This document shows positions 5,272 through 37,188 of a DNA stretch of 64,000 nt, piece by piece. The position numbers were made by a program, and so were the translations under genes. The notes beneath the pieces are model-generated. The model saw only the letters and a list, made by a program, of their open reading frames with translations, ran no database searches and was not told where the DNA came from. How positions within the stretch are numbered: the stretch's first letter is position 1; each line of letters opens with the position of its first letter. Location of the stretch: the IMG/VR virus record IMGVR_UViG_3300021964_009390, positions 124,001 to 188,000 of that record. One strand, written 5' to 3'.

Positions 5272-6117
5272 TTATTGTGTATCAGTTATATACTTTATTA
5301 CCGGTTGTAAAGAAATCCCTACATGTTCATCGTGTACACCTATATCAAATTTATTAGATAATATATCTATCAATCTCTTCATATGGTGGTTACCAGGGAG
5401 GTTTGGGTTCTTTGATAGGAGTTGCTCGAGAGTGTCTATATCATCAACAGGATAACCGAACCCTGCGCAATTATTTTTTGTTTTACACACTATTTGATCA
5501 TAACTTCTCTCATGGTAATGAACGAGGCATATACTAGTCGTATCGTACGCTACTTCTGATTCATGTACACCGTGTACATGGTGGTTCCCATGGTCAGTTG
5601 TTTTAAATTTATTATATTTATAAAACGTTTTTGCAAATTGATTGTAGCTATTGTGATAACCTCTCGTGGCTTGTCTAGCCGCCCGGTCATAACCACCTGG
5701 TGTTGTTATGTATGACCCTATATAATCTGTTTTGTATATACCTGTATCATTTTTAACATTCAATTGATTTAAATACTCAACAGTCCTATCCGGATGTAGC
5801 GTCTGTGTATTGTAATCATAATAAGTTATAAACTCATCAATGTCTACTGGCCACGCGAATTGGTAATCTTTCCTACCCACATCTCTCAGTATATGATGCA
5901 TGTGAGCTCCCTTGGCTCTATAATCATCACGTGATGTTAAATATATACCATGACTATTTTTGTATTGCTCACACATTTCATATGTACCATCGTCGCTACG
6001 ATTATCTACAATATATATGTTGTTATAACCAAACATGTTACCATGATATATTATCCAGTCCTCAACAATATCAATTTCATTTTTGACCATGGTGGCCAAC
6101 TTTACCAAACTACTCAT
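5272..6117 (-). CDS. glycosyltransferase, GT-A/GT2-like
   Basis: MVKNE..IVEDWI.YH, VDN.SDDGT, DIDEF, HGNH, HYH.RS. Confidence 0.8.
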   Translation of the reverse strand: MSSLVKLATMVKNEIDIVEDWIIYHGNMFGYNNIYIVDNRSDDGTYEMCEQYKNSHGIYLTSRDDYRAKGAHMHHILRDVGRKDYQFAWPVDIDEFITYYDYNTQTLHPDRTVEYLNQLNVKNDTGIYKTDYIGSYITTPGGYDRAARQATRGYHNSYNQFAKTFYKYNKFKTTDHGNHHVHGVHESEVAYDTTSICLVHYHERSYDQIVCKTKNNCAGFGYPVDDIDTLEQLLSKNPNLPGNHHMKRLIDILSNKFDIGVHDEHVGISLQPVIKYITDTQ

Positions 6118-6925
6118 TTAACCATGGGGTGTTAATTTTTACGTCACAACTATCAACCGGTTTATACTCCCATTGATTAATGTTTATTAGTTCGTTGGCA
6201 CGACCTACTCCATCGAATTGCCCACCAGTTATCAAATCATTATTTTGGATCCGCTGTTCAATTAAATTCATGGGTATACCGTGGCCATTAATTATATCCT
6301 CACATCGCGCTCTTTTCCGGTCATACCCGGTGTCGTGATAATGCAGGTACACAATGTCGGTTTGATGCTGTTTATTGTTTGTACTGGTACCGTGATGGTA
6401 TCCTAGATCTACTGTTTTAAAAGTACCGTTCCGGAAAAACTTTTTACACATGCCCGAGTCTGTTAAGTCCCAGTTAAATTTGTTTATTTCATGCACCGGG
6501 TGATCGTAATTTTTTTTCTCCGGTACACTATTCAACCAACCTCTTGTCATGTATATTTCTCCGTCGTCTGGTAGTGTTGCTATATATTTTTTAATTGTAT
6601 CTGAACATGTTACAACTCGGTTGCCCATACCATCCCACATACATATAAATTCATCAGCATCTAACGGTATCGAAATACCTGGTTGTTTGTTGTATTGTGC
6701 TATTTTGTTAGTGATCACATCACCTTTTTCTATAAACACGTCATGGCTGTACACGTTTATACCATAATTTTCTTTATATTCTTGCAATATTTCAAGGGTA
6801 CCGTCTGTAGAATTGTTATCATACACATGTATAGCCCACCATGGTACTATAGACCCGTGATGGTTGAGCCAGTCACGTATTATATGACTTTCATTTTTAA
6901 TATATGCGAATATTCTATTATACAT
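6110..6925 (-). CDS. glycosyltransferase, GT-A/GT2-like (tandem paralogue)
   Basis: IKNE..IIRDWLNHH, YDNNSTDGT, DADEF, GYH, LHYH. Confidence 0.8.
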   Translation of the reverse strand: MYNRIFAYIKNESHIIRDWLNHHGSIVPWWAIHVYDNNSTDGTLEILQEYKENYGINVYSHDVFIEKGDVITNKIAQYNKQPGISIPLDADEFICMWDGMGNRVVTCSDTIKKYIATLPDDGEIYMTRGWLNSVPEKKNYDHPVHEINKFNWDLTDSGMCKKFFRNGTFKTVDLGYHHGTSTNNKQHQTDIVYLHYHDTGYDRKRARCEDIINGHGIPMNLIEQRIQNNDLITGGQFDGVGRANELININQWEYKPVDSCDVKINTPWLNE

Positions 6926-6931
6926 GTTATT

Positions 6932-7603
6932 TTAGTCGATTATTTTTATATGTTCACATGATTTTATATAGAGTTGATCCTTCGGTGGTAGTGAAGATAT
7001 ATCCACCCATGCAAGAGCAATAAACTTACTATCCGGGTATGTAACTTGCTTCAAATACTCAATGTACGCTAATACACCGGATGGGTATGTACCGTACATT
7101 GTATCTACAAGGCTGCTGTAGTATTGTTCATCTATTAAGTTGTATCTTCGAATATCATCTTGTGTCCATATTTTATGAATTATTTTTCTCTTAGTGTATA
7201 GATCATTTGGATATATAACTGTGTTATATGGTCCAATACCGTCGTGCAGCACTCCATCCGGATTTCTCACGTCTACACAATACTGAGCGCATTTGTTGTA
7301 TAGTTTTTGCTTTTTGTCACTCGTGATTACTTGATGTACATTTTCCATACGCTCTAGATGTGGTATGTTTTCAGCTGTTGGATTCACCATTACAATAGGT
7401 GTTTCAAATTGTAACTGACGTATATTAATATTGTTACCGATTTCCCGCTCATTCCACCTAGAAGTCAAAACGCTAGGTACCGGCTTGGTGTTAACTGTAG
7501 CGACTAAATCATCAAAACTAGTGACTGTTTTGGATTTGTTTACAAATTGGTATTCAACTCCATACACACCTGGCAATATCTCTATAGATTTACTCGCAGT
7601 CAT
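6932..7603 (-). CDS. hypothetical protein in glycosylation island
   Basis: ORF coupled to gmd; likely start MTASK at 7603. Confidence 0.6.
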
Positions 7604-8594
7604 TATTGACCATATCAGTAACAAGCTGATCGAAGGACGTTCTAGGTGACCAGTTTAATTGTTCTCTAGCTTTTGTTGAATCACCTAGTAATTCATCAAC
7701 TTCCGCCGGACGAAAATATTTTTCATCGATGTATATCATCCTTCTACCTGTAATGCTGTCATACCCTACCTCATCAACCCCGGAACCTTCCCACATTATA
7801 TTGAACCCCTTGATGGTAAATGCCTTTTCAATAAATTCTCGTACTGTATGATATTCATTAGTTGATAGGACATAGTCATCTGGTGATGGTTGCTGCAGCA
7901 TCAACCACATGCCTTCGACATAATCCTTAGCATGGCCCCAGTCACGCTTACTGTCAATGTTACCCATTACCAGTCTATCAGTTTCGCCTTTCAATATTTT
8001 ATTCAAACCTAAAGTTATTTTCCGTGTCACGAAAGTCTCACCTCTTCTAGGACTCTCATGATTGAACAGTATACCAGTACATGCGTACATACCGTACGAC
8101 TCTCTATAATTTTTCGTAATCCAGTAACCATATAGTTTAGCGCATCCATATGGGGAACGTGGGTAAAATGGTGTAGTTTCACGTTGTGGTACCTCCTGTA
8201 CTAGACCATACAGCTCACTTGTACTAGCTTGGTATATTTTCGTTTTATCAATCATGTTTAGTAACCGGACTGCTTCTAATATTCTTAACGTGCCCAGACC
8301 ATCAACGTCTCCTGTATATTCAGGTACATCAAAACTAACTTTTACATGACTCATAGCGCCTAAGTTGTATATTTCATCCGGTTGAGTTTGTTGCAAGATA
8401 TTTATAATGTTTGTTGAGTCAGTGAGATCACCGTAATGTAAATTTATTTTATCATATATATGATCTACTCTGTGTGTATTTATCAAAGAAGATCTCCGGA
8501 CTAAACCATGTACTTCATAACCTTTGTCTATCAACAACTCTGCTAAATATGAACCGTCTTGACCGGTGATTCCAGTTATTAACGCTTTTTTCAT
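7590..8594 (-). CDS. gmd: GDP-mannose 4,6-dehydratase
   Basis: [63 protein letters not shown]. Confidence 0.97.
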
Positions 8595-8599
8595 TACAC

Positions 8600-9523
8600 T
8601 TATAATCTTAGTTTTGGGTGATTATTGACAAAATATTCGACTGTTTTTTCTATACCAGTCTGTAGACTTGTAAATTTTGTTTCCGGTAACAAGTCCATTA
8701 ACTTGGTATTATTAGCAGTTTTTTTATACTGACCATCACTATAATTTTTGTTAAACACTAACGCATGTTCGTAATCAAATGAACGTGCTATATATGTTGC
8801 TGCCTGTGCAATAGTATGCTCTTCACATGGACTTATTATGATATTCTCTTGATGAATTACGGGAACCAGTTTCATGATTATATCCGCTAAATCGTCTGCA
8901 TGTATAAACTGCCGGAGAGGCTTTCCGGAGCCTCTCACCTCAAACGGTGAATTTGACTGTTTAGCGACGTAACACTTATGAATTAGTGCTGGTAACACAT
9001 GAGCATCTTCTAGATTATAATTGTCATTATCACCATATATATTCGTAGGTATTACACAGTTATAATTGGTACCATATTGTTCGTTATATGCGCGACATTG
9101 TACATCTAACATGCGTTTCGCATATGCATATGCATCATTAGACATATGAGGTTTACCATCATGTAGCATGTTTTCATCAATAGGGTATGTAGTATCGTCC
9201 GGGAATATACAAGTAGATAGTATACCGATAAATTTACCTACCCGGTGGTCATGACATGCTTTGACTATATTAAAATTTATTAGCATGTTGTCTTCGAACA
9301 TATCTACCTTGTAGTTCATGTTTTTGTACAAACCACCTACGTTTGCTGCTAAGTGTATAACGCAATCTGGTTGGGATGTTTTCACATGCTCAGTCAACTG
9401 GTTGAAATCTCTGAGATCACAATCTGTAGACGACATATACTCTATTTGATAATCATACGATATAGCGGTTTTTTTAATCGCATGACCTACGAGCCCAGTA
9501 CCGCCAGTTACTAATATTTTCAC
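8600..9523 (-). CDS. fcl: GDP-L-fucose synthase
   Basis: [54 protein letters not shown]; adjacent to gmd. Confidence 0.93.
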
Positions 9524-9524
9524 G

Positions 9525-10394
9525 TTAATATATATCTAACAAGCTACAACATTCAACGTGTCCGGGATGCGATGTATTATATGTTTGCGTCCTAGCGTTT
9601 TGCATGTGCATGTGCAACGTTTTAATATCAATACATGGATTAAAAATCGGGTGTTGGTAGTGTTTATAAATTTCGCTCAATTTACTATCACATAACAATT
9701 CACCAACATGTATCAATTGCAGCTCACTCGGTATAAGTACCGGGGTTTCAAACCACCATGTGTCTTGTGAATATTTATTTGGTCGTTCATGTTCATGAAA
9801 TATTGATATATCATCTTCCGACACAAACTCCCATCTTGTCAAAGCTAATAACTTGTTTGACAAGTTTATAGCTTTTAACTTATCAATATCATTTGTTAAC
9901 ACAATATCACCATTACTTACACACCACAAACTTTTATCTTTGCAATTGTTGCAATACTCAAATAACGATTGGAAACTAGGTCGCCCTATACATGGTAGTA
10001 CAGTTAGTTTATCATGGGACTCGATCAAATGTTCCGACGGCCCGGTCTGTACATCCCACATTACATGGATATGTTCAACATTAGGGTTTTGTAAGTTTAA
10101 CTGTAATGCTAGTTGATATTCATACATTCTACTAGAGTTAGTATCATGATACATACAGGTTAAGACGTTAACTTTAGAGCTGGTATTTAGTGAATGGTGA
10201 TTATTTAGTATATAATTATTTATTTTTTTATAATCTACATCTGTTAACATAACATGACGGCCTTCAAATCTACCGGTAGTTTGCCAATGACGTTTAGCTG
10301 CGGCTATATTGCTACCAAACGCATGTTGTAAGTCAGGGTATGAATTCAAATAATCTGTATAGTTTACTCTTGAAGGGTGTGGGTATTTTATCAT
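9525..10394 (-). CDS. putative glycosyltransferase with N-terminal YPDL...HW...G..EGR repeat
   Basis: YLNSYPDL..AF......KRHW..TGRFEGR followed by NGDIV, ALTRWE, SQDTW, NPC. Confidence 0.55.
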   Translation of the reverse strand: MIKYPHPSRVNYTDYLNSYPDLQHAFGSNIAAAKRHWQTTGRFEGRHVMLTDVDYKKINNYILNNHHSLNTSSKVNVLTCMYHDTNSSRMYEYQLALQLNLQNPNVEHIHVMWDVQTGPSEHLIESHDKLTVLPCIGRPSFQSLFEYCNNCKDKSLWCVSNGDIVLTNDIDKLKAINLSNKLLALTRWEFVSEDDISIFHEHERPNKYSQDTWWFETPVLIPSELQLIHVGELLCDSKLSEIYKHYQHPIFNPCIDIKTLHMHMQNARTQTYNTSHPGHVECCSLLDIY

Positions 10395-11305
10395 TTAACA
10401 ATTTTTTTTCCATAGTATCGAACTATGTCTCCACGTATATCTTTAGGTATCTTATATACACCTTCCGGAGGTGTTTGTGATTCGGGTGTGACATTAAATA
10501 TACTATATAAACCACTACCTATAGATATCTTATCAACATCTCCAACCACTCTATCGGCTAGTACTGGTGCATTACCACCACAAGCAAATATAACAACATC
10601 ATAATTTTTAACAACACTATTTATTTCCTCCGCTATACGAGATACAGTTTCCATGTGGTTTTTATCTGGTCCAGTGTTACCAAAACATGAGGGGTATTCT
10701 ATATACCCTAGATCCGATATATTATATAGGTTGTTATCTACATAGCTATCGTAACAGGCTTTACCCATGTTGCTTACAATTAATACTCGATTATTACTGA
10801 GAGCGCGTTTACATATTTTCTGTGATTCATCAAACCATGTGTTTATATCGTTTATTATAGGTTCAAAAATCTTAAAGTCTTGTTTTACCATTGGAATAAT
10901 ACCTTTTGACCAATTCCAATTACCTAGATGTGTTGATATATAGCATTTACTATATTCATCGCTGAATTTATCCATATGTTCCTGTAAACCTATACCTTGA
11001 TGTAGTAATAATAAAGAAAAGGTTGAGTTTGCTAGTGCAGTCTTGTAGCTATCCACCCATTGATCTAACACCGGTGAATCAATAATTTTTTCTAGACCAA
11101 TTTCACTCTCTCGGTGGATATCTATTGTACTGTCGTAGAGACCAGCAGTATTGTACAACCACCGGCAAGACCATTTCATATCCTTCCACGGTGAATACAT
11201 ATGCTTTATACTATCAATTTCACCTATAGTCTTTAAATGATGTACATACAATAAGCAGCCTTCGCTACACCCTGCTCTGTAATAACTGTAGTTACTATTG
11301 CGCAT
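10391..11305 (-). CDS. hypothetical glycan-related protein
   Basis: 304 aa; YDVVIFACGG.A..L...ISIGSGL resembles GT-associated domains; TAAATA 6 nt upstream. Confidence 0.5.
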   Translation of the reverse strand: MRNSNYSYYRAGCSEGCLLYVHHLKTIGEIDSIKHMYSPWKDMKWSCRWLYNTAGLYDSTIDIHRESEIGLEKIIDSPVLDQWVDSYKTALANSTFSLLLLHQGIGLQEHMDKFSDEYSKCYISTHLGNWNWSKGIIPMVKQDFKIFEPIINDINTWFDESQKICKRALSNNRVLIVSNMGKACYDSYVDNNLYNISDLGYIEYPSCFGNTGPDKNHMETVSRIAEEINSVVKNYDVVIFACGGNAPVLADRVVGDVDKISIGSGLYSIFNVTPESQTPPEGVYKIPKDIRGDIVRYYGKKIVK

Positions 11306-11335
11306 TATTTCTATTTACTCTAATAGTTAATTTAA

Positions 11336-12256: not shown

Positions 12257-14868
12257 CTGTTAAATTTATATTGCTTTATTAGAGCTTGTTTCTTACCATT
12301 GTCTGTTTTAGTTCTACCATACGAGTTATCAACTATTCTATAGTATGATAACGGACCTTCCCAAGACTTCGCGATGTTTAAATTTGAATCTATACATCTT
12401 AACCACAAAGCCCAGTCTGCAATACTACCATATTTTTTCTCATCGAAGTAACCGACAATTTCATGTATCTCTCGGCGCCACACCGGGGCAGAGTGGCATG
12501 GGTTACACGTATTATTACTATTGCAGTTCCAGAAGTTTTCAATATGCAAAGGTTGACCTACACTATACTCATTAAACCACATATCGTTGTGTTTTTTCAC
12601 GTGTTCATTATATTTTTTTACGTAACTTTTACCAGCTACAACTGGAGCAAAAGCTATATCTGTTGCCGGTGAATTGGACAGGAAATCTATCATATACCGG
12701 GAAAAATCCGGGTCATGACGATCATCTAGATTGGCATTTGTTATATATAATCCGGTAGATTTTTTAATTCCTAATTCCCAACACTTATAAATACCTGGGT
12801 CTTCCTTTTTAGTGATGTTTATTATCCTTATATTATGGTGATTTTTTTCCAGGTCTGCGATCTTTTTTTGTGTTTTTTTACTATGTGAATCTTTTACACT
12901 CACAATTACCCATTCTAGCTCATCTGGATATTTTGAATTTTGGTTTTTAAAATCCTCACACAGATCATCAAAGTATTCATCTGCTTTATACAACGATGTC
13001 ACCCATGACAACATCACTGATTCAGATTTTTTTTCTAGTTTTTTTAAATCATATAATATTTTCTGGTTGAATGTCTGTTGAGATACGTGGGACTTATCTA
13101 AATTATGTAAATATTTATTAGTCCTTTCAACAAGACTAGTGAACTGATCGCTAGTCAGACTTTCAATATCTTTTACATTATCATAAAACATAGGGTAATC
13201 AATACCTATATACTGTTCGAAGCTCGGATGTCTATTCAACAGTACAGGTGTCTCGCATCTAATGCACTCTAACAACAGATTGCTAGCCGTAACATCGAAT
13301 GCATCCATATACAATATATTCTTTTCAAAAATTTTTATATACTCATCATTTGCTAGGTGTTTGATAAGCTCAACATTATACATGGATGATTTGATGATAT
13401 CTGTAAGGTTGCTGAAGTCTTTTTTGACTAGTAATCGTTTATGTATATTACCCGGTATTTTAATATCGTTAAAAGATTTTAAATTTCGCATCCACCAACC
13501 TATATGATATATTTGTTTATTTTTAGACTGTTTATACTGCTTGATGTCGAATCTAGTTTTTATGTCATCAGTTATAGGGTGATTAACTGAGACGATTTTA
13601 TTTTTAAGGAAAGGAAATTTTTTCAATATATCCGGTCGTGTCAAGTACTTTTTATGATTTCTAGAGACAGTATATATGTACTCAGCTTTTTGCATAAGCC
13701 GGAAATCACAATTTTTATAATATGTATCGTTACTGATTAACTCTGGTAGTGCATGCTGGACTAACAAACCATTAAAATTCCCCGGGGTTGTTTTAACCTG
13801 GTTGCTTAGTTCATCTATACTTTTGGGGGTTGAGCGCTTATATATAGTTTCCCATTGCTCGAAAGGTGGGTTGTGTACAAATGTTATTAATTTTATATCA
13901 TTATCTATAATAGAGTCCATCACCCATCTATTAGTTACCATGTCTCTACCCCATGTAGTAAGTTCTTCTAACCAAGGGTTAAAATATAGTGTATTTTTGT
14001 ACGTAAGTTTATCATATCCTCGATCGATTAACTCCTCATGCAAATGATGCATAGTTCCTTTCCAGCCAAAATAATGGGTACCATACCAAGAGCCTCCATG
14101 TGGTGATAGAATGATATTTTCACCAGTTATTTCCCAATTTTTTTGTATACTTTTTCCTGTATTTATACACACTCTACCCTCATGACGACCATATTTTATA
14201 TAATGTGCATACGCTAGCTGTGGTGTATCAAACCCAGCTGCTGTTACATCTGGATTGTTATACATGTAATATTCTGCATCAAAGCTATTTTTTAGTGTAT
14301 ATTTAATTAAATTCTCACCGGATTCATGTGCATGTACAAGTAGTCGATCATCCGATATATGATGAGATATACCGTTTAATAACCGATATGTTTTACTATC
14401 AAACTCCGGGTTAAGGTTGTAAAAATGCTCTCTAGACATTAATCGGTTTTCCTTCTCACCATACTTATAGTAATGTTGTGCAGCTTTACTAGGTGTATTG
14501 AAACCACCAGATACTATGTCTGGATAAGCGCGTATATAAAAATCTCGATCCAAATTGCCACCCACTAAATCTAAAGCGGATTTTTCTTCATGTGATTTAA
14601 TTAGAAATTGGTCACAAATGATACATTTTTTATACTCACAGTTCAGTAGTGTGTTGATTTGTTGTATTATCGTGTCGTCAATATTACCTGTAACTAGATT
14701 GGTACTATTGTATATTTTATAACTCGGAACTCCGGTAGATGATCTATCGTCATCGCTTGTAAATATTATACAGTCATTGTTGTTCTTTACATACTCAGTA
14801 ACATTAGTTGGAAGATTCTCTATAGAACTGACTCTAAATATTGTTACACCGTTACCATTCTTGGACAT
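12253..14868 (-). CDS. multidomain glycosyltransferase (repeats + GT-B-like + GT2)
   Basis: Two YPD/HY..YG..E.R repeats, middle HNPP..GWWMRN..LECI...P domain, C-terminal ANLDDR/PVWR/ADWALW GT2. Confidence 0.75.
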   Translation of the reverse strand: MSKNGNGVTIFRVSSIENLPTNVTEYVKNNNDCIIFTSDDDRSSTGVPSYKIYNSTNLVTGNIDDTIIQQINTLLNCEYKKCIICDQFLIKSHEEKSALDLVGGNLDRDFYIRAYPDIVSGGFNTPSKAAQHYYKYGEKENRLMSREHFYNLNPEFDSKTYRLLNGISHHISDDRLLVHAHESGENLIKYTLKNSFDAEYYMYNNPDVTAAGFDTPQLAYAHYIKYGRHEGRVCINTGKSIQKNWEITGENIILSPHGGSWYGTHYFGWKGTMHHLHEELIDRGYDKLTYKNTLYFNPWLEELTTWGRDMVTNRWVMDSIIDNDIKLITFVHNPPFEQWETIYKRSTPKSIDELSNQVKTTPGNFNGLLVQHALPELISNDTYYKNCDFRLMQKAEYIYTVSRNHKKYLTRPDILKKFPFLKNKIVSVNHPITDDIKTRFDIKQYKQSKNKQIYHIGWWMRNLKSFNDIKIPGNIHKRLLVKKDFSNLTDIIKSSMYNVELIKHLANDEYIKIFEKNILYMDAFDVTASNLLLECIRCETPVLLNRHPSFEQYIGIDYPMFYDNVKDIESLTSDQFTSLVERTNKYLHNLDKSHVSQQTFNQKILYDLKKLEKKSESVMLSWVTSLYKADEYFDDLCEDFKNQNSKYPDELEWVIVSVKDSHSKKTQKKIADLEKNHHNIRIINITKKEDPGIYKCWELGIKKSTGLYITNANLDDRHDPDFSRYMIDFLSNSPATDIAFAPVVAGKSYVKKYNEHVKKHNDMWFNEYSVGQPLHIENFWNCNSNNTCNPCHSAPVWRREIHEIVGYFDEKKYGSIADWALWLRCIDSNLNIAKSWEGPLSYYRIVDNSYGRTKTDNGKKQALIKQYKFNR

Positions 14869-14896
14869 CTGAATTATTTATTTATGTAGTTGAATA

Positions 14897-15832
14897 TTAC
14901 AACACCCAAAACACACGTTCCCAAGCATGAGACATAGTACCATCAAGCGCAATAGGTTCTGGTTCAAACAATGTTTCAATATCTATATTTTTTAGAAAAT
15001 TAAACAGTCTGTCGCAATACCTATTTGTACACCAGAACATAGTACCGGCATTATACTTAATTCTCATGTTACTAGGTATAGTTAAACCCATCATTTTTGA
15101 TAAATTGTTCATTGAGATATAATTGACACTCCGAGGATTATATTTCTCTATGATACTAAATTTATCTACGGGAAATATGTCATTTTTAGTGTTATTCAGT
15201 ATGTTAGCGTTAAAGCTGTAACTATCTAACAAACTTTTACAGTATTCCTCACGCCACTTTTCATGTAGATATGTTGTTTTTTTACCATGTATCTTACATA
15301 CATGTTTATATTTTATAAATTTTTTGTCTTTCACAAATTGCAAAAAGCTTCTGATATCACGACCATTATTCGGTACAAATTCATGATGCACACCTGTAGA
15401 TGATTCCATATGTTCTTGAATCTGACTCTCGATATCATCACTAGCGGATTTGTCACAAATGTAAAAATATACATCCGCATTCACTTGTTGTCGGTATCGA
15501 TTGATATACGAGCAAATTTCTCTGAGGTACATTGTGTAGTATATATATACAACAATCGCGACATCTGCCTGCACTACAGGAGCATCGCTACGGATTTCAT
15601 CTGTTTTGATATTGATAGGGTATGCACATTGTTGATGCAACGCCAAGAATCTATCTGGTGTTATAAACTCTGGATTACAAAATTGTGATATAAATTTCTT
15701 TTGTGACGTGGTAAGTTTATTATGTTCGACAATATGTACATTTTGTATATTGTGTTTAGATAAACTGTTATATAAATCTACGCAAAATTGTTCATAACTA
15801 TCAACGTAACGTATATAGTTTAACTGTATCAT
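14897..15832 (-). CDS. rhamnan synthesis protein F (RgpF)-like
   Basis: YIYY, NNGRDI, KIHGKK, AGTMFW, DGTMSHAWER. Confidence 0.8.
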   Translation of the reverse strand: MIQLNYIRYVDSYEQFCVDLYNSLSKHNIQNVHIVEHNKLTTSQKKFISQFCNPEFITPDRFLALHQQCAYPINIKTDEIRSDAPVVQADVAIVVYIYYTMYLREICSYINRYRQQVNADVYFYICDKSASDDIESQIQEHMESSTGVHHEFVPNNGRDIRSFLQFVKDKKFIKYKHVCKIHGKKTTYLHEKWREEYCKSLLDSYSFNANILNNTKNDIFPVDKFSIIEKYNPRSVNYISMNNLSKMMGLTIPSNMRIKYNAGTMFWCTNRYCDRLFNFLKNIDIETLFEPEPIALDGTMSHAWERVFWVL

Positions 15833-16617
15833 GCGTTGAGTATGAGTTGTTGTGTGATCCCGGGTAGTGAATCAAACCATGGTTTAAGTTTATAGGTATA
15901 ATCGTATCTCAGGCGGTATTTGGCTTGCTTTGTTTTGGTACGTGTTTGACTTTCCAGATGTATGGCAACTGCCGTATCTAGATACCAATTTTTATACCCG
16001 GTGATAACATATCGCATGTTTAATTGAATATCTTCCCAGCATTCAGTATATGATTCATCAAAACCACCACATTTTGTAAATTTATCACGATCTATCAACA
16101 AACATGCAGCGGTACAACCTACCACGATATCGTTAGAGAGTTGGTTTGTGTTCCCATAACCACGGTGTGTGCATTGTAGCAACCCGGTGGTGTCCACATA
16201 CACATGCTGCCCACCATGCTGTATTTTACCGTCCGGGAAAATTAGTCTACAACCAACAGTAGATATATTGTTGTCTGACACAATTTTTTTGTACATTTGA
16301 TCTACACAATTATTCTGTAAAATTATATCATCGTTACACAACAACACATACGGTTCGTCAATACAGTTGTTGATAACGTAGTTGTTATTACCAGCGAAGT
16401 GGTATTGTTCGAATTCTAAAAATTTGCAGTTTTTAGGTGTTAGCATGTGCTTTAGTGTAGCAATTAGTTGCAGTTTGTGGTCTTGATCGCTTCCGGTGTC
16501 ACATATATAAAATTTAATCTGTACGTCATGAGTGTGTTCCAATACACTAGACACACACTGAGAGACCAGGTCAGGATTGTTCTTGGTTAGAATAACTATT
16601 GCAACTTCTGCTGTCAT
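15829..16617 (-). CDS. GT2 family glycosyltransferase
   Basis: DTGS, FAGNNN, LCNDD, IQHGG, TAACLLI, GGFDE...EDI. Confidence 0.88.
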   Translation of the reverse strand: MTAEVAIVILTKNNPDLVSQCVSSVLEHTHDVQIKFYICDTGSDQDHKLQLIATLKHMLTPKNCKFLEFEQYHFAGNNNYVINNCIDEPYVLLCNDDIILQNNCVDQMYKKIVSDNNISTVGCRLIFPDGKIQHGGQHVYVDTTGLLQCTHRGYGNTNQLSNDIVVGCTAACLLIDRDKFTKCGGFDESYTECWEDIQLNMRYVITGYKNWYLDTAVAIHLESQTRTKTKQAKYRLRYDYTYKLKPWFDSLPGITQQLILNA

Positions 16618-16634
16618 ACATAATTACTTATGTA
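16617..16634. promoter_or_regulatory. near-palindromic bidirectional late-type promoter between divergent GT2 and phoH
   Basis: TACATAA-TTAC-TTATGTA; gives TAATTA (+) 8 nt before ATG 16635 and TAAGTA (-) 7 nt before ATG 16617. Confidence 0.55.
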
Positions 16635-17354
16635 ATGGCAAATAGAAAATCACGACCTCGACCTAACGATATTGGTTCGCTCACATGGGACCTAGATTTT
16701 AAAATTAATTATAATTTCACACCCAACGTTACACACAAAAGTTTTGTGGGTATGATGTTGAAGTCTGATACAAAAATGCTGCTAGTAGACGGACCAGCGG
16801 GTACAGCCAAAACATATCTGGCTACATATGGTGCGTTGTGTTTGTTAAAAAAACATGCGATTGACGAGATCGTGTATATACGCAGCGTGGTAGAAAGTGC
16901 CAGTCAAAAAATGGGTAGCCTTCCAGGAGAAGTCGATGACAAGTTTTTACCATACAGTATGCCTTTGGTAGAAAAATTAGATGAACTGGCCGGGGTCACG
17001 GTACGTAAAGAGTTGATAGGTAGAAATTTTGCACATTGTGTTCCTGTCAACTACGTTCGAGGTCTCACGTTCAACAACAGCTTTGTGATTGTTGACGAGG
17101 CACAAAATCTGACAACCGGGGAACTCACCACCATCTTGACTAGATTTGGTGAAGGTAGTAGATTTGTGATTGTAGGAGATACTAAACAGAGTGACATCAA
17201 CTCCCGGTCTGGTTTTGCTCCTGTCAAAAATTGTTTCGATAATCAAGAGAGTGAGGACCGAGGTATATACACATTCAATTTCAGTGAAGAGGATATCGTG
17301 CGAAGCGACATTTTGAAATTTATAGTCAAACAATTGGACAACATACAAAAATGA
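16635..17354 (+). CDS. phoH: PhoH-like ATPase
   Basis: GPAGTAKT, GSLPG, RGLTF, DEAQN, TRFGE, GD..QSD, DIVRS. Confidence 0.93.
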   Translation: MANRKSRPRPNDIGSLTWDLDFKINYNFTPNVTHKSFVGMMLKSDTKMLLVDGPAGTAKTYLATYGALCLLKKHAIDEIVYIRSVVESASQKMGSLPGEVDDKFLPYSMPLVEKLDELAGVTVRKELIGRNFAHCVPVNYVRGLTFNNSFVIVDEAQNLTTGELTTILTRFGEGSRFVIVGDTKQSDINSRSGFAPVKNCFDNQESEDRGIYTFNFSEEDIVRSDILKFIVKQLDNIQK

Positions 17355-18265
17355 AAATTGTACATATACTAGCCACTCCGTGCGCCGGAGCTCCTAGTAC
17401 ATTGTCAAAATATTTAAACAAACTTCCTGGAGTGACTAGTGAGGTACTCACAACCGAGACGACTGATTTGAATGAATGTCGGAGAAAATTACATACAGAT
17501 CAGAATATACAATACAGATTGAATCGAGCGGATGTGTTACATTGGCATAACATGTATATTGAAAACGATTTACATGCCAAGCAATTGGTCACATTCCACA
17601 GTCCACCAGAAAACAGGATGGTACATGACAGTATCAACATGTTAACTAACAACAACAAAGTCAAGAAAACTGTAGTCAGTCACTACCATACATTGTTAGA
17701 TGCGTATTCTGGTTACACTGGTGTGAGAAACATTGTTGATGTTGATGATAGTTATGTTACACCATGCAATCCCAAGCAGCATGTCTTGTTCGGTATGACA
17801 CCCACACCTGAACAGCCTGGTACAATATGGCAAACAAAAGGTTTCGATAAAACTTTGCTCATGATGAAGCGATTGAAAATGAGAAACAGTCGAGTACACT
17901 TTCGTACATTGACCGATGCAACACGTAGTGATTGTTTAGAGTTCAAATCTAATTGTGATTTGGTGATAGATGAATGCGTCACACCAGGGTTTCATTTGTC
18001 CGGACTAGAGGGATTGGCATTAGGTAAACCTACTGTGTGCTGGATTGACGATCGAGTTTGTGACATGTTAAAACGTTTGACTGGTGCTGAGGATGTACCC
18101 TTTATCAGTGACAGCGTATATTGGTTAGAAGACACGCTATACAGGTTACTGGAGCGTGGAGATGATCATTTGCGTGAGGTAGGGTCAAAGAGCCGGGAAT
18201 GGTTTTGCAAATACTGGAAGACATCAGACATATTGAATCAATATGTGCAGTTATATAATGAATGA
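17351..18265 (+). CDS. GT-B/GT4-like glycosyltransferase
   Basis: DVLHWH, TKG, CDLVIDEC..GFHLSGLEGLALGKP. Confidence 0.7.
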   Translation: MKIVHILATPCAGAPSTLSKYLNKLPGVTSEVLTTETTDLNECRRKLHTDQNIQYRLNRADVLHWHNMYIENDLHAKQLVTFHSPPENRMVHDSINMLTNNNKVKKTVVSHYHTLLDAYSGYTGVRNIVDVDDSYVTPCNPKQHVLFGMTPTPEQPGTIWQTKGFDKTLLMMKRLKMRNSRVHFRTLTDATRSDCLEFKSNCDLVIDECVTPGFHLSGLEGLALGKPTVCWIDDRVCDMLKRLTGAEDVPFISDSVYWLEDTLYRLLERGDDHLREVGSKSREWFCKYWKTSDILNQYVQLYNE

Positions 18266-19982
18266 TACATACAAAATAGCTTGGTTATGTCCGACGCGAT
18301 GTCGAGTACATAGTGTGAAAAAACTTATAAAGTCATTAGAAAGTACATGCTCTGCGACGGAAAATTTTGTTTTATATCTAGGTGTAGATCATGATGATCA
18401 TGAAACATTAGAATATTACAAGCAGTACCATCTGTTGAAAAGTTATGTTCAGCTGATCATCATACCTGATCAAAAATGCTTTCCCGGGCTCCCATGGATA
18501 TGGAATTATATGGTATCCCAAACAACAGAATCGCTCATAGGCATGTGCGGTGATGATTTTGTGTTTGAAACAAACAGATGGGACGAGATGATTGTGAATT
18601 ATTGGAGAACTAATTACGTTGATAATGTAGAATTGGTGCACTTCGATGACTGCCTGCAGCTACGTCATTTATCAGACGAAGATAAAACAAAAAAAGAGAA
18701 TCTTCGGTATGTAGTTGCAACTAATTCAATAGTTCATAGAGACACAGTCAATTTGTTAGATGGTTATTTACCACGATATTTCAAACATCTGTTTTGTGAC
18801 ACATGGTTGACAGATGTGTATAATCTTGCCCAGCGATGCACTTTCATGCACAACTTGAAAATTAAACATGAGCATCATAGTATCACCGGAGATGTGGATG
18901 ACACCACACGGAAATTGAAGCAGCATTGCGAGTGGGGCTCCGCATACTCATTGTTCAATTACAAGCAATCAGAAAGAAATGCGCAGGCTAATATACTAAA
19001 AAAACATATCAAATCGTCTGGTCCTGATATTGTAGATAGTAACAGACATGTGTCTACATCTAAAACTAAAGTGTTTGCTAATGTTATGATACGTGATGAA
19101 GAGGTACTCCTGTCGCATGTAGGTAAGGTATGGAAACATTACCCGATTGACAAGTGGGTATTTTATGATGATCAAAGTAGTGATGATACAGTGAATACAA
19201 TTCATCAAATATTCGGTGATCGGGCCGTGGTGTTGCATGACAAGGACCGGAAGACAGAAGCACATATACGTTACGAGATGATACAGTATAGTCATGACAA
19301 TGGATGCTCTGACGGTGTGGTCGTGTCTATAGATACAGATGAGCTGTTGAGTAAATCCATATTGGATGATTTTGACAATATTATTGACTTATCAACAAAA
19401 TATAATTTACAATTATACCAATACAATTGCGCGGGTGATTTATACTATCAGAGAACAGATACAAACTACAAAACGAATCGGCGAGGTTTCCTGGTGTCAT
19501 TGAAACATGCAAATGTTTATGAGATGTGTAAAAATGCACAGTCAAAAGAGGGTTATCATCTGGCAAGAGTACCTAGCGTGAACTTGAAAAGGTTGCAAGA
19601 TGATAGATACGGTTTCATACATTTACAGTCACTCAACACGACATTTTATTACATCAAGCAGATGTGGTACAAACATTATGATTATGTTGAATCTGAAATG
19701 TCCATTGACCAGGTGAATGAGCGTTATGATCCGGTTGTGAACTGGGGAGAGTTTCTCCCGGAACCAATGCCGGAGAACATAATAGATGAGCATATGATGA
19801 AACATATAACACCAGGTATTTTTGATGATGTGTTGAAGAACAAACCACATTACTTGAAATATATATTATACCACCTAGACTCTCGATTGGTTACATTTGG
19901 TCATGACTTGTTTTTGTCAGATGTGTTGAACCCATCTAATGTAAAACAACTAAAGAGTTCAAAATTACAACACTCTGTATAA
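18258..19982 (+). CDS. two-domain GT2-like glycosyltransferase
   Basis: PTR.R..GDD..WD..FCDTW domain followed by RDEE..YDDQSSDDT..IDTDE domain. Confidence 0.75.
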   Translation: MNDTYKIAWLCPTRCRVHSVKKLIKSLESTCSATENFVLYLGVDHDDHETLEYYKQYHLLKSYVQLIIIPDQKCFPGLPWIWNYMVSQTTESLIGMCGDDFVFETNRWDEMIVNYWRTNYVDNVELVHFDDCLQLRHLSDEDKTKKENLRYVVATNSIVHRDTVNLLDGYLPRYFKHLFCDTWLTDVYNLAQRCTFMHNLKIKHEHHSITGDVDDTTRKLKQHCEWGSAYSLFNYKQSERNAQANILKKHIKSSGPDIVDSNRHVSTSKTKVFANVMIRDEEVLLSHVGKVWKHYPIDKWVFYDDQSSDDTVNTIHQIFGDRAVVLHDKDRKTEAHIRYEMIQYSHDNGCSDGVVVSIDTDELLSKSILDDFDNIIDLSTKYNLQLYQYNCAGDLYYQRTDTNYKTNRRGFLVSLKHANVYEMCKNAQSKEGYHLARVPSVNLKRLQDDRYGFIHLQSLNTTFYYIKQMWYKHYDYVESEMSIDQVNERYDPVVNWGEFLPEPMPENIIDEHMMKHITPGIFDDVLKNKPHYLKYILYHLDSRLVTFGHDLFLSDVLNPSNVKQLKSSKLQHSV

Positions 19983-19990
19983 ATAATAAC

Positions 19991-36770: not shown

Positions 36771-37188
36771 AAAAGACACAAACACTTACGTAAACCAGAA
36801 AGAGTTTATGGAAGCCCTCCGTGTGTATTACGATACTGATGAAATTAGCACCGAACTCGCTACATACGTTAAGAAAATTGCTGAAGGGCTATCATATGCA
36901 CCAAATTTTATAAATTATACTTATAAAGACGAGATGGTTGGTGACGCTATACTCAAAATGATGCAGGCACTAGAGTATAAAAAATTTGACTTAGAGAACA
37001 GAGACAATCCTTTTGGTTATTTTACAACAATCGCGTTTCATGCTTTTATTAATCGAATTAAAAAAGAAAAAAAGCAACGCGAAACAATTAATGATTACCA
37101 GGAACAAGTGTATCAAGAGTTGATGAATGACGGTTCATCAGCGACAGGTGCGCATGTATACATAGCTGATAGTACAGACGACGAATAA
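36709..37188 (+). CDS. gp55: late transcription sigma factor gp55
   Basis: YVN.KEF, IAEGLS..PNFINYTYKDEMVGDA, NPFGYFTTIAFHAF..RIKKEKK; exact start uncertain (36709 or 36715). Confidence 0.92.
   Translation: MTMKKSNTTSKPLKKRKRASRKDTNTYVNQKEFMEALRVYYDTDEISTELATYVKKIAEGLSYAPNFINYTYKDEMVGDAILKMMQALEYKKFDLENRDNPFGYFTTIAFHAFINRIKKEKKQRETINDYQEQVYQELMNDGSSATGAHVYIADSTDDE

What the first reader, a model, noticed from the sequence alone, without database searches (positions are those of the whole stretch)
5272..19982. Roughly 15-kb late-expressed glycan assembly island: candidate virion glycosylation system
Seen: about 8 glycosyltransferase-like genes, RgpF-like, WcbI-like, gmd and fcl. Outlying genes include a rhamnose-pathway reductase (55482) and an HxRxGD fucosyltransferase-like gene (50655). 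The only promoters I found in the island are late-type (11312, 14875, 16621-30), and it ends next to a fibre-like gene (19991). Known: Gmd plus Fcl make GDP-fucose; RgpF and WcbI act in rhamnan and capsule synthesis. Inference: late timing points to a fucose/rhamnose, possibly acetylated, glycan on the virion, or to late host-surface remodelling, rather than DNA modification.
Basis: partly seen in the sequence, partly recalled or inferred. Interest (0 to 1): 0.72.

Follow-up and report, generated by a model that had tools for sequence, protein, structure and literature searches.

The report
Late-promoter glycan-building island in marine phage
An uncultured T4-like marine phage carries a conserved 15-kb block of sugar-building genes that makes GDP-fucose, encodes nine glycosyltransferases and sits behind late-type promoters; this kind of cluster is known from large cyanophages, but what the sugar is attached to (virus particle or host surface) remains untested.

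Summary
Window 5272-19982 carries 14 genes:
- Gmd, which scores above the NCBIfam equivalog cut-off.
- A GDP-L-fucose synthase with its catalytic residues in place.
- A WcbI-like protein.
- Nine glycosyltransferase-like genes, with at least 10 GT domains.
- One protein of unknown function.
- PhoH, which has no link to glycans.

The window lies in a complete 222-kb T4-like myovirus with no psbA and a capsid protein at most 34% identical to any isolate. The island is syntenic next to phoH in six related metagenomic contigs.

The three "late" sites exist. One is a perfect NATAAATA. One is a recurrent variant. One is a variant conserved in relatives. The phage encodes gp55 and gp45, and the same motif precedes the terminase and structural genes. 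Timing remains inferred.

No polytopic membrane glycan machinery was found in the genome. Elsewhere the genome holds a two-enzyme NDP-rhamnose route, a GT10 fucosyltransferase, about eight more GT-like genes, ten sulfotransferases and an APS-kinase-like gene.

The kind is known (P-SSM2 and S-SCSM1 "LPS" clusters), and this is a new variant. I favour cytoplasmic glycosylation of a phage protein (about 0.4) over host-surface remodelling (about 0.3). DNA modification is unlikely.

The parts
5272..6117 (-). GT-A glycosyltransferase (Glyco_tranf_2_4)
   Evidence: PF13704 E 9e-14, 52 bits against a cut-off of 27.5. Paralog of 6110-6925.
6110..6925 (-). GT-A glycosyltransferase (Glyco_tranf_2_4)
   Evidence: PF13704 E 6e-12. 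40-41% identical homologs in L015 and L017.
6932..7624 (-). Unknown 230-aa protein. The likely true start is the ATG at 7603.
   Evidence: No Pfam, PHROG or NCBIfam hit. Weakly conserved in relatives, 36% over 99 aa.
7590..8594 (-). GDP-mannose 4,6-dehydratase (Gmd)
   Evidence: PF16363 E 9e-148. TIGR01472 equivalog at 547.7 bits against a cut-off of 415. 80% identical in relatives. 68-72% identical to cyanophage Gmd.
8600..9523 (-). GDP-L-fucose synthase (Fcl/GMER type)
   Evidence: Full-length match to human GDP-L-fucose synthase 4e5y, E 1e-83, with STC, YxxxK and the epimerisation His aligned. NCBIfam Fcl gives 217 bits, below the equivalog cut-off of 500.
9525..10394 (-). GT-A-fold protein with an N-terminal HWxxxGxxEGR motif; lineage-specific
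   Evidence: AF2 pLDDT 90.6. Foldseek probability 1.0 to heparosan synthase, ppGalNAc-T, B4GalT1 and KfiA. 24 homologs, all metagenomic.
10391..11305 (-). GT-D-like glycosyltransferase candidate
   Evidence: PF22882 at 26.4 bits, cut-off 27. NF040628 E 2e-5. 47-59% identical in relatives.
11312..11319 (-). Late-type promoter variant AGTAAATA, 6 nt before the ATG at 11305
   Evidence: Sequence read. The GTAAATA class is seen 4 times at start-proximal positions against 0.11 expected.
11336..12256 (-). WcbI-like protein (possible glycan-modifying enzyme)
   Evidence: PF18588 E 1.5e-23, 84 bits against a cut-off of 29.2. Only a weak direct hit to the WcbI structure 4bqn, E 0.01.
12253..14868 (-). 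871-aa bifunctional glycosyltransferase: N-terminal repeats, a GT-B domain (about 250-615) and a GT2 domain (621-754)
   Evidence: PF00535 at residues 621-754. Atlas structure and feature hits to GT4/WsaF-type GT-B for 250-615. Only 16 homologs, none in isolated phages.
14875..14886 (-). Perfect late-type promoter CATAAATAAATA, with AATAAATA ending 6 nt before the ATG at 14868
   Evidence: Sequence read. Motif statistics.
14897..15832 (-). RgpF-like glycosyltransferase (C-terminal half of the RgpF model only)
   Evidence: PF05045 E 2e-22, model positions 267-494 of 503. Homologs head the island in L017 and L022.
15829..16617 (-). GT2 glycosyltransferase, first gene of the minus-strand operon
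   Evidence: PF00535 E 2e-10. 53-57% identical in L015, L016 and L018.
16625..16632 (-). Late-type variant CATAAGTA, 7 nt before the ATG at 16617, within the 17-nt divergent gap to phoH
   Evidence: Sequence read. ATAAGTAATTAT is conserved at the same place in L015 and L021.
16635..17354 (+). PhoH-like ATPase (not a glycan gene); conserved neighbour of the island
   Evidence: PF02562 E 4e-48. A conserved TTGCAA box lies upstream in relatives.
17351..18265 (+). GT-B (GT1/GT4-type) glycosyltransferase
   Evidence: Atlas feature score 0.99 and structure TM 0.85 to GT1/GT4 clusters.
18243..19982 (+). 579-aa protein: N-terminal GT domain, C-terminal half unassigned
   Evidence: phrog_14945 glycosyltransferase E 5e-15 for residues 11-239. 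No Pfam or PDB hit.
19978..19985 (+). Perfect late promoter TATAAATA, 5 nt before the ATG at 19991
   Evidence: A perfect motif is also present in L015 and L017.
19991..21049 (+). 352-aa fibre-like candidate virion protein
   Evidence: AF2 model shows an N-terminal hairpin, about 110 residues of long helices and a confident C-terminal beta-sandwich. Only weak fibre or structural look-alikes and no PDB match. 37 homologs, all in this lineage and always beside the island.
36673..37188 (+). gp55-like late sigma factor (reads the late promoters)
   Evidence: tblastn with T4 gp55 gives 35% identity over 113 aa, E 1e-11.
54066..54797 (+). gp45-like sliding clamp (co-activator of T4-type late transcription)
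   Evidence: phrog_223 E 3e-7.
55482..56456 (+). NDP-4-keto-6-deoxyglucose 3,5-epimerase/4-reductase type SDR (L-rhamnose route), directly behind a gene with a perfect late motif
   Evidence: PDB 4qqr (3,5-epimerase/4-reductase) E 2e-28 and 7jid (UDP-L-rhamnose synthase) E 4.5e-22. RmlD equivalog only 67 bits against a cut-off of 224. Late motif at 55144.

Best explanation
The island is a lineage-conserved, cytoplasmic glycan-assembly module of an uncultured, deep-branching T4-like marine or estuarine myovirus.

**Proposed mechanism**
1. Gmd and Fcl turn host GDP-mannose into GDP-L-fucose.
2. Nine soluble glycosyltransferase-like proteins (at least 10 GT domains) and a WcbI-like modifying enzyme build a fucose-containing hetero-oligosaccharide or polysaccharide.
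3. Other clusters of the same genome probably feed into it: an NDP-glucose 4,6-dehydratase with a bifunctional epimerase/reductase (L-rhamnose), a GT10 fucosyltransferase, ten sulfotransferases and an APS-kinase-like gene.
4. The island is transcribed from T4-type late promoters (NATAAATA and variants) read by the phage's gp55 with gp45. The promoters lie so close to the start codons that the mRNAs would be nearly leaderless.
5. The complete genome and the related islands hold no polytopic membrane protein that could start, flip, polymerise, export or ligate a glycan. The core GTs stay conserved while the decorating genes vary between relatives. I therefore think the most likely acceptor is a phage-encoded protein glycosylated in the cytoplasm late in infection. 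That would be a virion component such as the adjacent fibre-like protein.

**Shown:** gene identities, the fucose route, the motifs, gp55 and gp45, synteny, and the absence of membrane parts.

**Inferred:** late timing (about 0.65) and the virion acceptor (about 0.4).
For: **Gene identities:**

**Synteny and conservation next to phoH:** L015-L018, L021 and L022.

**Late motif**
- 28 of 43 perfect ATAAATA sites within 30 nt of a start lie 5-7 nt before it.
- The background rate is 0.19% per site.
- The motif precedes the terminase large subunit, the 1384-aa protein and many genes in the structural module.

**Late transcription factors:** a gp55 homolog and gp45. NATAAATA with g55, g33 and g45 is the accepted late system of T4-like marine phages (PMC2984593).

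**Recurrence in relatives:** late motifs sit at the island head, at RgpF and at the fibre-like gene.

**Flanking genes:** strong sigma-70-like boxes occur only at the flanking genes, the helicase (12 of 12) and DUF366 (11 of 12).

**Other late glycan genes:** the APS-kinase-like gene and the 94-101 kb sulfotransferase cluster also carry perfect late motifs.

**No membrane machinery**
- No hydrophobic segment occurs in any island protein.
- The whole genome has one multi-TM ORF (plus a hydrophobic repeat ORF in the terminal tandem repeat), and it is a coiled-coil repeat protein.
- No ORF with two or more hydrophobic segments lies in the related islands; the one in L022 (98 aa) lies outside its GT genes.

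**Lineage restriction:** the big GT, 9525 and the fibre-like protein have only lineage-restricted homologs, so they were not recently captured from a host locus.
Against: - No transcript data exist. Four metatranscriptomes that hold part of the capsid gene gave no contig on 11001-17000.
- The motif also precedes non-structural genes, so it does not prove exclusively late expression.
- Two of the three island sites are one-mismatch variants.
- Family names (RgpF, WcbI, GT25, WbqC, GT10) come from cell-surface polysaccharide pathways, and many such GTs are peripheral proteins without TM helices.
- The second glycan cluster has a sigma-70-like promoter (genome 38315).
- The fibre-like assignment has no significant fold match.
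- The complex prediction gave no answer.
- Nothing here shows any glycan on any virion protein.
Confidence: 0.4

Rival explanations
1. Host-surface remodelling. The soluble phage GTs extend host undecaprenyl-linked or lipid A-core intermediates, and the host's own initiation, flipping or ABC export and ligation machinery displays the new fucosylated (and sulfated) LPS, capsule or EPS. Possible purposes are to stop progeny or competing phages adsorbing to infected cells and debris, or to deter grazers. This is the standard reading of cyanophage 'LPS' clusters.
For: - P-SSM2 has an analogous 12-kb cluster of gmd, epimerases and GT2/GT1/GT11/GT6/GT25 genes.
- The literature interprets such clusters as cell-surface modification (PMC2984593; PMC9602691; PMC12801897).
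- The family names RgpF, WcbI, GT25 and WbqC come from surface polysaccharide pathways.
- Peripheral GTs need no TM helix.
Against: - The phage supplies none of the membrane steps.
- Late expression leaves little time for export and would not serve superinfection exclusion.
- The core GTs are conserved across relatives only 36-48% identical in the neighbouring gene. Those relatives probably infect different hosts with different acceptors.
- The GTs have no close bacterial homologs.
- The P-SSM2 cluster lacks late motifs and has sigma-70-like boxes, so its regulation differs.
Confidence: 0.3
2. The start-proximal ATAAATA elements are not late promoters. They would be AT-rich translation-initiation or mRNA-stability elements, or promoters used throughout infection. 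In that case the island is expressed with the surrounding replication genes (early or middle) and its timing says nothing about its target.
For: - The motif also precedes non-structural genes: 17 perfect cases outside the structural and early modules.
- The total genomic count of NATAAATA (119) is near what base composition predicts.
- The island is embedded in the replication module.
- No transcription start site data exist.
Against: - The spacing peak at 5-7 nt fits a -10-type element with a transcription start at the ATG. The sigma-70-like TATAAT boxes show the same spacing.
- gp55 and gp45 are present.
- The motif precedes the terminase and structural genes.
- It is rarer in the early-like 66-103 kb region, 4 of 75 genes.
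Confidence: 0.2
3. DNA hypermodification. The glycosyltransferases decorate modified bases in phage DNA with a complex glycan, as T4 alpha/beta-glucosyltransferases and recently described phage DNA glycan systems do.
For: - The island sits among replication and DNA-modification genes: QueC, QueE, FolE and a GATase for 7-deazaguanine.
- A separate GT lies between gp46 and gp43, where T4 has a-gt.
Against: - DNA GTs act with replication from early or middle promoters, whereas the island shows late-type motifs.
- The scale (nine GT-like genes, GDP-fucose, a WcbI-like protein, and sulfotransferases in relatives) fits a heteroglycan on a protein or lipid.
- The 7-deazaguanine route already accounts for a DNA modification.
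Confidence: 0.05

Closest known systems
'LPS' / cell-wall synthesis and modification clusters of large T4-like cyanophages (P-SSM2 PSSM2_257-271; S-SCSM1; S-SCSM2R)
   Same: All are T4-like marine myoviruses over 200 kb. They carry several clusters with Gmd, a GDP-fucose synthase or epimerases, fucosyltransferases and many GT2/GT1/GT25 genes. None has Wzx/Wzy-type parts, and the function is untested.
   Different: - This phage has no psbA, and its capsid is at most 34% identical to any isolate.
- The GTs are not orthologous. The 871-aa GT has no tblastn hit in 50,697 phage records, and the RgpF-like gene has one weak hit.
- The island sits at a fixed locus beside phoH across the lineage.
- It carries late-type motifs, whereas the P-SSM2 cluster shows sigma-70-like boxes and no ATAAATA at gene heads.
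- This genome adds ten sulfotransferases and about 17 GT-like genes. The 13 GTs of S-SCSM2R were reported as possibly the highest number in a marine phage.
Chlorovirus PBCV-1 capsid glycosylation machinery (virus-encoded GMD, GMER and cytoplasmic multidomain GTs such as A064R); my own knowledge
   Same: Both have a virus-encoded GDP-fucose route and soluble, partly multidomain GTs. Both lack host-type membrane machinery and show a conserved core with variable decorations among relatives. Fucose and rhamnose are the likely sugars.
   Different: PBCV-1 is a eukaryotic virus, and its glycan on the Vp54 capsid protein has been shown chemically. Here no glycan has been observed. No sequence orthology was tested beyond shared families.
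Mimivirus UDP-L-rhamnose pathway (R141 dehydratase and L780 synthase) and fibril glycosylation
   Same: Window 55482 matches PDB 7jid, titled 'UDP-L-rhamnose synthase' (L780 by my recollection), at E 4.5e-22. The genome's dehydratase matches PDB 6vlo, titled 'putative dTDP-D-glucose 4,6-dehydratase' (R141 by my recollection), at E 5e-61. It is a two-enzyme route without RmlA or RmlC.
   Different: The dehydratase is closer to bacterial RmlB (E 1e-101). The nucleotide carrier (UDP or dTDP) is unknown. These genes lie outside the island.
Mycobacteriophage virion glycosylation (Freeman et al. 2023, cited in PMC12619734 and PMC12801897)
   Same: Phage-encoded GTs act in the cytoplasm on the capsid and tail-tube subunits. 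This is the only phage case where virion glycans are demonstrated.
   Different: Those systems use one to a few GTs next to structural genes in siphoviruses of Actinobacteria. Here there are nine GT-like genes and sugar-nucleotide synthesis in a T4-like phage, and glycosylation is not shown.
Streptococcal Rgp rhamnan and Burkholderia Wcb capsule pathways
   Same: Domain-level matches to RgpF (C-terminal half) and WcbI.
   Different: There is no RgpA-E, no ABC transporter, no RmlA or RmlC, and no other wcb genes. The resemblance is at the level of single domains only.

Membership tests
De novo GDP-L-fucose pathway (Gmd + Fcl) | Gmd scoring as a TIGR01472 equivalog | tested here: met
   547.7 bits against a cut-off of 415, over the full length.
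De novo GDP-L-fucose pathway (Gmd + Fcl) | Fcl with the SDR Ser/Tyr/Lys triad plus the Cys and His epimerisation residues | tested here: met
   STC, YAYAK and the HVLP His align with human GDP-L-fucose synthase, E 1e-83 over the full length.
De novo GDP-L-fucose pathway (Gmd + Fcl) | Fcl above the NCBIfam equivalog cut-off | tested here: not met
   NF047922 gives 217 bits against a cut-off of 500. The protein is a divergent member, closer to eukaryote-type enzymes.
T4-type late transcription unit | Phage encodes the gp55 late sigma factor and the gp45 clamp | tested here: met
   gp55 homolog at 36673-37188. gp45-like gene at 54066-54797. gp33 was not identified.
T4-type late transcription unit | (N/T)ATAAATA -10 element upstream of the genes | tested here: met
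   Perfect at 14875-14886 and 19978-19985. One-mismatch variants lie at 11312-11319 and 16625-16632, and the latter is conserved in relatives.
T4-type late transcription unit | Transcripts appear only after DNA replication starts | not testable with these tools
   No host or time course is available. The metatranscriptome contigs gave nothing.
Wzx/Wzy- or ABC-transporter-dependent O-antigen/capsule locus | Initiating phosphoglycosyltransferase, flippase or ABC transporter, polymerase, and ligase (polytopic membrane proteins) | tested here: not met
   No hydrophobic segment occurs in island proteins. The only multi-TM ORF in the 222-kb genome outside its terminal repeat is a coiled-coil repeat protein. 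No ORF with two or more hydrophobic segments lies in the related islands; the one in L022 (98 aa) lies outside its GT genes. The test used a hydropathy scan, not family HMMs.
Rgp rhamnan synthesis system | Full-length RgpF together with dTDP-rhamnose genes RmlA-D | tested here: not met
   Only RgpF model positions 267-494 of 503 are matched. PF00483 and PF00908 are absent from the genome.
Cyanophage 'LPS'/CWSM gene cluster | Cluster of sugar-nucleotide enzymes and several GTs in a T4-like marine myovirus | tested here: met
   T4 core genes, the island content and the comparison with P-SSM2.
Cyanophage 'LPS'/CWSM gene cluster | The phage is a cyanophage (psbA and close T4-like cyanophage core genes) | tested here: not met
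   No PF00124 match. The capsid protein is at most 34% identical to cyanophage gp23.
Virus-encoded virion glycosylation system (chlorovirus, mimivirus, mycobacteriophage type) | Soluble virus-encoded GTs with their own sugar-nucleotide supply and no membrane export parts | tested here: met
Virus-encoded virion glycosylation system (chlorovirus, mimivirus, mycobacteriophage type) | Glycan demonstrated on a virion protein | not testable with these tools
   This needs virions. The complex prediction of two GTs with the fibre-like protein gave no answer.
Phage DNA glycosylation (T4 a-gt/b-gt type) | Hydroxymethyl-pyrimidine synthesis plus a DNA glucosyltransferase expressed with replication | not tested
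   No search for a dCMP/dUMP hydroxymethylase was run. The island GT families and late motifs do not fit. The separate GT at 40124-41269 was not examined further.

The most novel reading that the evidence does not exclude
This uncultured T4-like phage lineage may build a virus-encoded, sulfated fucose- and rhamnose-containing glycan coat on its own virion proteins late in infection. That would be a bacteriophage counterpart of chlorovirus and mimivirus capsid glycosylation. The variable decorating genes (sulfotransferases, GT61, fucose genes) would diversify the virion surface between relatives.
Probability: 0.3. Interest if true: 0.85.

Novelty: new variant of a known kind. Interest (0 to 1): 0.55.

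Why it matters
Large marine T4-like phages have been known since 2005 to carry 'LPS' gene clusters, and nobody has shown what they do.

This lineage offers a cleaner test case for four reasons:
- The island is fixed beside phoH.
- It appears to be under late promoters.
- It brings its own GDP-fucose supply. The genome adds a rhamnose route, an APS-kinase-like gene and ten sulfotransferases.
- It lacks every membrane step of surface-polysaccharide assembly.

If the glycan sits on the virion, tailed phages of the ocean would join giant viruses in glycosylating their particles with their own enzymes. That would affect adsorption, stickiness to marine particles, grazing and decay.

If the glycan sits on the host, it would be a rare case of late, phage-directed synthesis of a sulfated, fucosylated surface polymer.

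Either result would settle a long-standing annotation guess.

Tried and rejected
**Searches and predictions that gave nothing useful**
- DNA searches against 50,697 phage records. The near search found nothing, and the distant search found only short hits to HTVC008M and cyanophages.
- tblastn of the 871-aa GT and of the RgpF-like protein. The first gave no hit and the second one weak hit.
- Laying contigs of four metatranscriptomes that hold 38-48% of the capsid-gene words on 11001-17000. Nothing mapped, which is uninformative.
- Foldseek of the fibre-like model against PDB gave no significant match. Against viral models it gave only weak, fibre-enriched hits.
- Complex prediction of the GT-B and GT-A proteins with the fibre-like protein gave no answer.
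- Genome-collection scans with the 55482 protein and with Fcl found nothing, or a single 32% match.
- Rfam on 3000-23000 found nothing.
- PDB sequence searches with the N-terminal 240 residues of the big GT, with the 579-aa protein and with 50655 found nothing.

**Scans at chance level**
- The generic sigma-70 scan of the region gave 111 hits against 94.5 +/- 10.6 expected.
- The terminator scan gave 13 hits against 10 expected.
- Only the position-constrained analysis was informative.

**Readings I rejected**
- A classical dTDP-rhamnose pathway, because RmlA and RmlC are absent.
- A fucosyltransferase call for 50655, because it has the motif but no family support.
- The 442-aa multi-TM ORF as a polysaccharide polymerase or flippase. 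It is a coiled-coil repeat membrane protein.
- Host assignment as a cyanophage, because there is no psbA.

Full report
**What the window is.** The 64-kb window is bases 124001-188000 of a 222,461-bp viral record rated complete.
- It is a T4-like myovirus. It has a gp23-type major head protein, DNA polymerase gp43, gp46/gp47, UvsX, gp41-like helicase, gp32, primase, gp44, gp45, a baseplate hub and a T4-type terminase.
- It has no psbA.
- Its capsid protein is at most 34% identical to that of any of 50,697 deposited phages.
- It has no near DNA match.
- The same DNA occurs in estuary and marine metagenomes.
- It is therefore an uncultured, deep-branching T4-like lineage with an unknown host.

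Minus strand, read from 16617 down to 5272:

| Coordinates | Gene |
|---|---|
| 15829-16617 | GT2 |
| 14897-15832 | RgpF-like protein; matches only model positions 267-494 of 503 |
| 12253-14868 | 871-aa protein: repeats, a GT-B domain of GT4/WsaF type, and a GT2 domain |
| 11336-12256 | WcbI-like protein |
| 10391-11305 | GT-D-like protein, just under the Pfam cut-off |
| 9525-10394 | lineage-specific protein; a confident AF2 model shows a GT-A fold |
| 8600-9523 | Fcl |
| 7590-8594 | Gmd |
| 6932-7624 | unknown 230-aa protein |
| 6110-6925, 5272-6117 | two GT2_4 proteins |

Plus strand:

| Coordinates | Gene |
|---|---|
| 16635-17354 | PhoH |
| 17351-18265 | GT-B |
| 18243-19982 | 579-aa protein with an N-terminal GT domain |

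- Gmd passes the NCBIfam equivalog cut-off.
- Fcl falls below its cut-off, but it aligns end to end with human GDP-L-fucose synthase (E 1e-83) with every catalytic residue in place.
- A phage-encoded GDP-mannose to GDP-L-fucose route is therefore well supported.
- The count comes to nine GT-like genes with at least ten GT domains.

**Conservation.** The island is not a one-off acquisition.
- Four IMG/VR contigs and two further metagenomic contigs carry the same arrangement.
- The shared order is: fibre-like gene, GT(s), phoH, then the divergent GT2/RgpF, the big GT, the GT-D-like gene and the sugar-nucleotide genes.
- Scaffold genes are 40-63% identical, and Gmd and Fcl are 72-81% identical.
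- The periphery varies. Some relatives carry two to four sulfotransferases and a GT61 inside the island in place of some genes here.
- The big GT, the 9525 protein and the fibre-like protein have only a few dozen homologs among 5.8 billion clusters. All are metagenomic, and none has a source-given name beyond 'hypothetical protein'.

**Promoters.** I treated the motif claim as a separate question.
- *Spacing.* Perfect ATAAATA sits 5, 6 or 7 nt before the start codon in 17, 6 and 5 genes. That accounts for 28 of the 43 perfect sites found within 30 nt of a start.
- *Background.* A random genomic site shows the motif 3-9 nt upstream only 0.19% of the time.
- *Genes it precedes.* It precedes the terminase large subunit, a 1384-aa protein next to the baseplate hub, and many genes of the structural module.
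- *Transcription factors.* The phage encodes a gp55 late sigma homolog at 36673-37188 (35% identity to T4 gp55, E 1e-11) and a gp45 clamp. NATAAATA read by gp55, gp33 and gp45 is the accepted late system of T4-like marine phages (PMC2984593).
- *Second promoter class.* TTGACA-17-TATAAT, also 5-7 nt before the start, precedes the helicase, DUF366, FolE, the DNA polymerase, QueC, the gp41-like gene and the primase.
- *Inside the island.* The site at 14875-14886 is perfect. The site at 11312-11319 is GTAAATA, a first-position variant class seen 4 times against 0.11 expected. The site at 16625-16632 is ATAAGTA. This variant is unique in the genome, but it is conserved as ATAAGTAATTAT in the tiny phoH-GT2 gap of two relatives only 53-57% identical in protein.
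- *In relatives.* RgpF, which heads the operon in some of them, carries a perfect AATAAATA in two. The fibre-like gene carries a perfect motif in three genomes.
- *Sigma-70-type sites.* No sigma-70-like site scoring 10 or more of 12 sits at any island gene head, while both flanking replication genes have one.
- *Comparison with P-SSM2.* In its analogous cluster I found no ATAAATA at gene heads, and sigma-70-like boxes instead.

I conclude that late, gp55-dependent transcription is the best reading (about 0.65). It remains an inference for two reasons. The motif also precedes non-structural genes, and no transcript data could be obtained. Contigs of four metatranscriptomes that hold part of the capsid gene did not cover the island.

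**The wider glycan programme.** The island is only part of what the genome invests in glycans.
- *Rhamnose route.* Window 55482-56456 is most like bifunctional 3,5-epimerase/4-reductases (PDB 4qqr '3,5-epimerase/4-reductase' at 2e-28, PDB 7jid 'UDP-L-rhamnose synthase' at 4.5e-22). It follows a gene with a perfect late motif. An NDP-glucose 4,6-dehydratase lies at genome 53415-54614. With RmlA and RmlC absent, this is a two-enzyme L-rhamnose route.
- *Second cluster, genome 35.9-43.3 kb.* It holds a GT10 fucosyltransferase, GT25, a GT47-like gene, WbqC, a PIG-L deacetylase, an ATP-grasp protein, DUF6492 and two sulfotransferases.
- *Third cluster, genome 93.4-98.2 kb.* It holds four sulfotransferases, a GT90 and a paralog of the 9525 GT-A.
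- *Sulfation.* In all, ten Sulfotransfer_2 matches pass the Pfam cut-off, against none in 14 control genomes. An ORF with an APS-kinase-like N-terminus lies behind a perfect late motif.
- *Further GT-like genes.* A DUF5672 protein lies beside a sulfotransferase, and a GT lies between gp46 and gp43.
- *Total.* About 17 GT-like genes. The 13 of S-SCSM2R were described as possibly the highest number in a marine phage (PMC12801897).

**What is missing.**
- No island protein has a hydrophobic segment.
- Outside its terminal tandem repeat, the whole genome has one ORF with several such segments. It is a coiled-coil protein with EKIVEVEKPVEV repeats, not a flippase, polymerase or phosphoglycosyltransferase.
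- The related loci contain no polytopic membrane protein in the island; the single ORF with two hydrophobic segments (98 aa, in L022) lies outside its GT genes.
- Every membrane step of surface-polysaccharide assembly would therefore have to come from the host.

**Mechanism.** The steps I regard as shown are these:
- GDP-L-fucose synthesis.
- A battery of soluble GTs.
- Late-type promoter elements with the matching sigma factor.
- Conserved linkage to a late-promoter gene at 19991-21049. Its model has an N-terminal hairpin, about 110 residues of long helices and a confident C-terminal beta-sandwich.

The acceptor is inferred. I favour a phage-encoded protein glycosylated in the cytoplasm (about 0.4) for four reasons:
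- The likely late timing.
- The absence of membrane parts.
- The conservation of core GTs across relatives that probably infect different hosts.
- The lineage-restricted nature of those GTs.

The standard alternative is extension of host lipid-linked intermediates to remodel LPS or EPS. It remains well alive (about 0.3). Peripheral GTs need no TM helix, and the family names come from such pathways. DNA glycosylation is unlikely (about 0.05).

The fibre-like call itself is weak. There is no PDB fold match, only low-scoring fibre or structural look-alikes among viral models. A complex prediction gave no answer.

**Comparison and novelty.**
- The kind is known. P-SSM2 has 24 'LPS' genes in two clusters, one of which contains gmd, epimerases and GT2/GT1/GT11/GT6/GT25. 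S-SCSM1 has Gmd, a fucose synthase and fucosyltransferases.
- This island differs in lineage, in having non-orthologous GTs, in its fixed position, in its apparent late regulation and in its link to sulfation. I rate it a new variant of a known kind.
- It works most like the virus-encoded glycosylation systems of chloroviruses and mimiviruses. Membership in that class cannot be claimed without seeing the glycan.

**Verdict.**
- Interest is moderate (0.55). It would rise sharply if virion glycans, especially sulfated ones, were demonstrated.

Noticed in passing
Genome outside the window (G000:C1 33692-34483, 41166-42393, 64986-66197, 93429-98199, 111868-112569; loci L027-L034): Ten Sulfotransfer_2 genes pass the Pfam cut-off in one phage genome, against none in 14 control bacterial and archaeal genomes. 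Relatives carry such genes inside the phoH-adjacent island. This suggests a sulfated glycan. One full-text search turned up no phage described this way.
   Followed up: partly
G000:C1 99860-100732 (L026:1483-2355): A 290-aa ORF whose first 90 or so residues resemble APS kinase (PF01583 at 51.8 bits; PDB APS kinases at 4e-8). It sits behind a perfect TATAAATA late motif. No ATP sulfurylase was found. It may supply PAPS for the sulfotransferases.
   Followed up: partly
Whole genome; examples at window 3087, 5229, 14868, 19991, 41556: Both promoter classes end 5-7 nt before the start codon: sigma-70-like TTGACA-17-TATAAT and late NATAAATA. Many mRNAs would therefore be leaderless or nearly so. 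Few genes show a Shine-Dalgarno sequence, and the capsid gene is one that does. This is unusual for a T4-like phage and may hint at the host.
   Followed up: partly
window 4633-5229, 23010-23894, 28277-28921, 47139-47849, 47851-48522: A 7-deazaguanine (preQ0/ADG-type) DNA-modification gene set: QueE-like radical SAM, FolE GTP cyclohydrolase, QueC and a glutamine amidotransferase. DUF366 lies nearby, and relatives also show a PTPS/QueD. I did not identify a DpdA-type transglycosylase.
   Followed up: no
window 40124-41269: A 381-aa glycosyltransferase (phrog_7162, E 7e-28) lies between gp46 and DNA polymerase gp43. T4 carries its DNA alpha-glucosyltransferase in the same region, beside genes 47/46. 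It is a candidate DNA- or protein-modifying GT, separate from the island.
   Followed up: no
G000:C1 32277-32660 (L006:2277-2660): A phage-encoded tmRNA (Rfam RF00023 at 90 bits; ARAGORN tag peptide ending ...PALLAA). Two tRNAs (Met, Thr) lie at about 78.9 and 80.3 kb.
   Followed up: partly
L023 (NCBI assembly contig, 93 kb) and L024: The nearest non-lineage homologs of the 871-aa GT lie in contigs with large multidomain genes on both strands: a 1360-aa GT, a faint WcbI hit, an RmlD-like SDR, DUF5672, and an SDR fused to a 2OG-Fe(II) oxygenase. Atlas neighbours of the GT-B domain are clusters rich in Nucleocytoviricota. This may be a glycan toolkit shared between large phages and giant viruses. 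I did not verify the nature of these contigs.
   Followed up: partly
G000:C1 1-130 and 222027-222461: Short tandem repeats lie at both ends of the record: a unit of about 24 nt (gtgcggaactaacactgacgagct) at the start and agttgttgtcgaa repeats at the end. They could be assembly-end artefacts or terminal repeats. The record is classed linear but complete.
   Followed up: no
G000:C1 5766-8228 and 51894-52907: An 820-aa AAA+ ATP-dependent protease-like gene (phrog_4871, E 5e-244) lies on the opposite strand right after the capsid gene. A UvdE UV-endonuclease gene is also present.
   Followed up: no
It has no hit in Pfam, NCBIfam, PHROGs or PDB. The fucosyltransferase idea is unsupported but not excluded. 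The genome's clear fucosyltransferase is the GT10 gene at G000:C1 40252-41157.
   Followed up: yes
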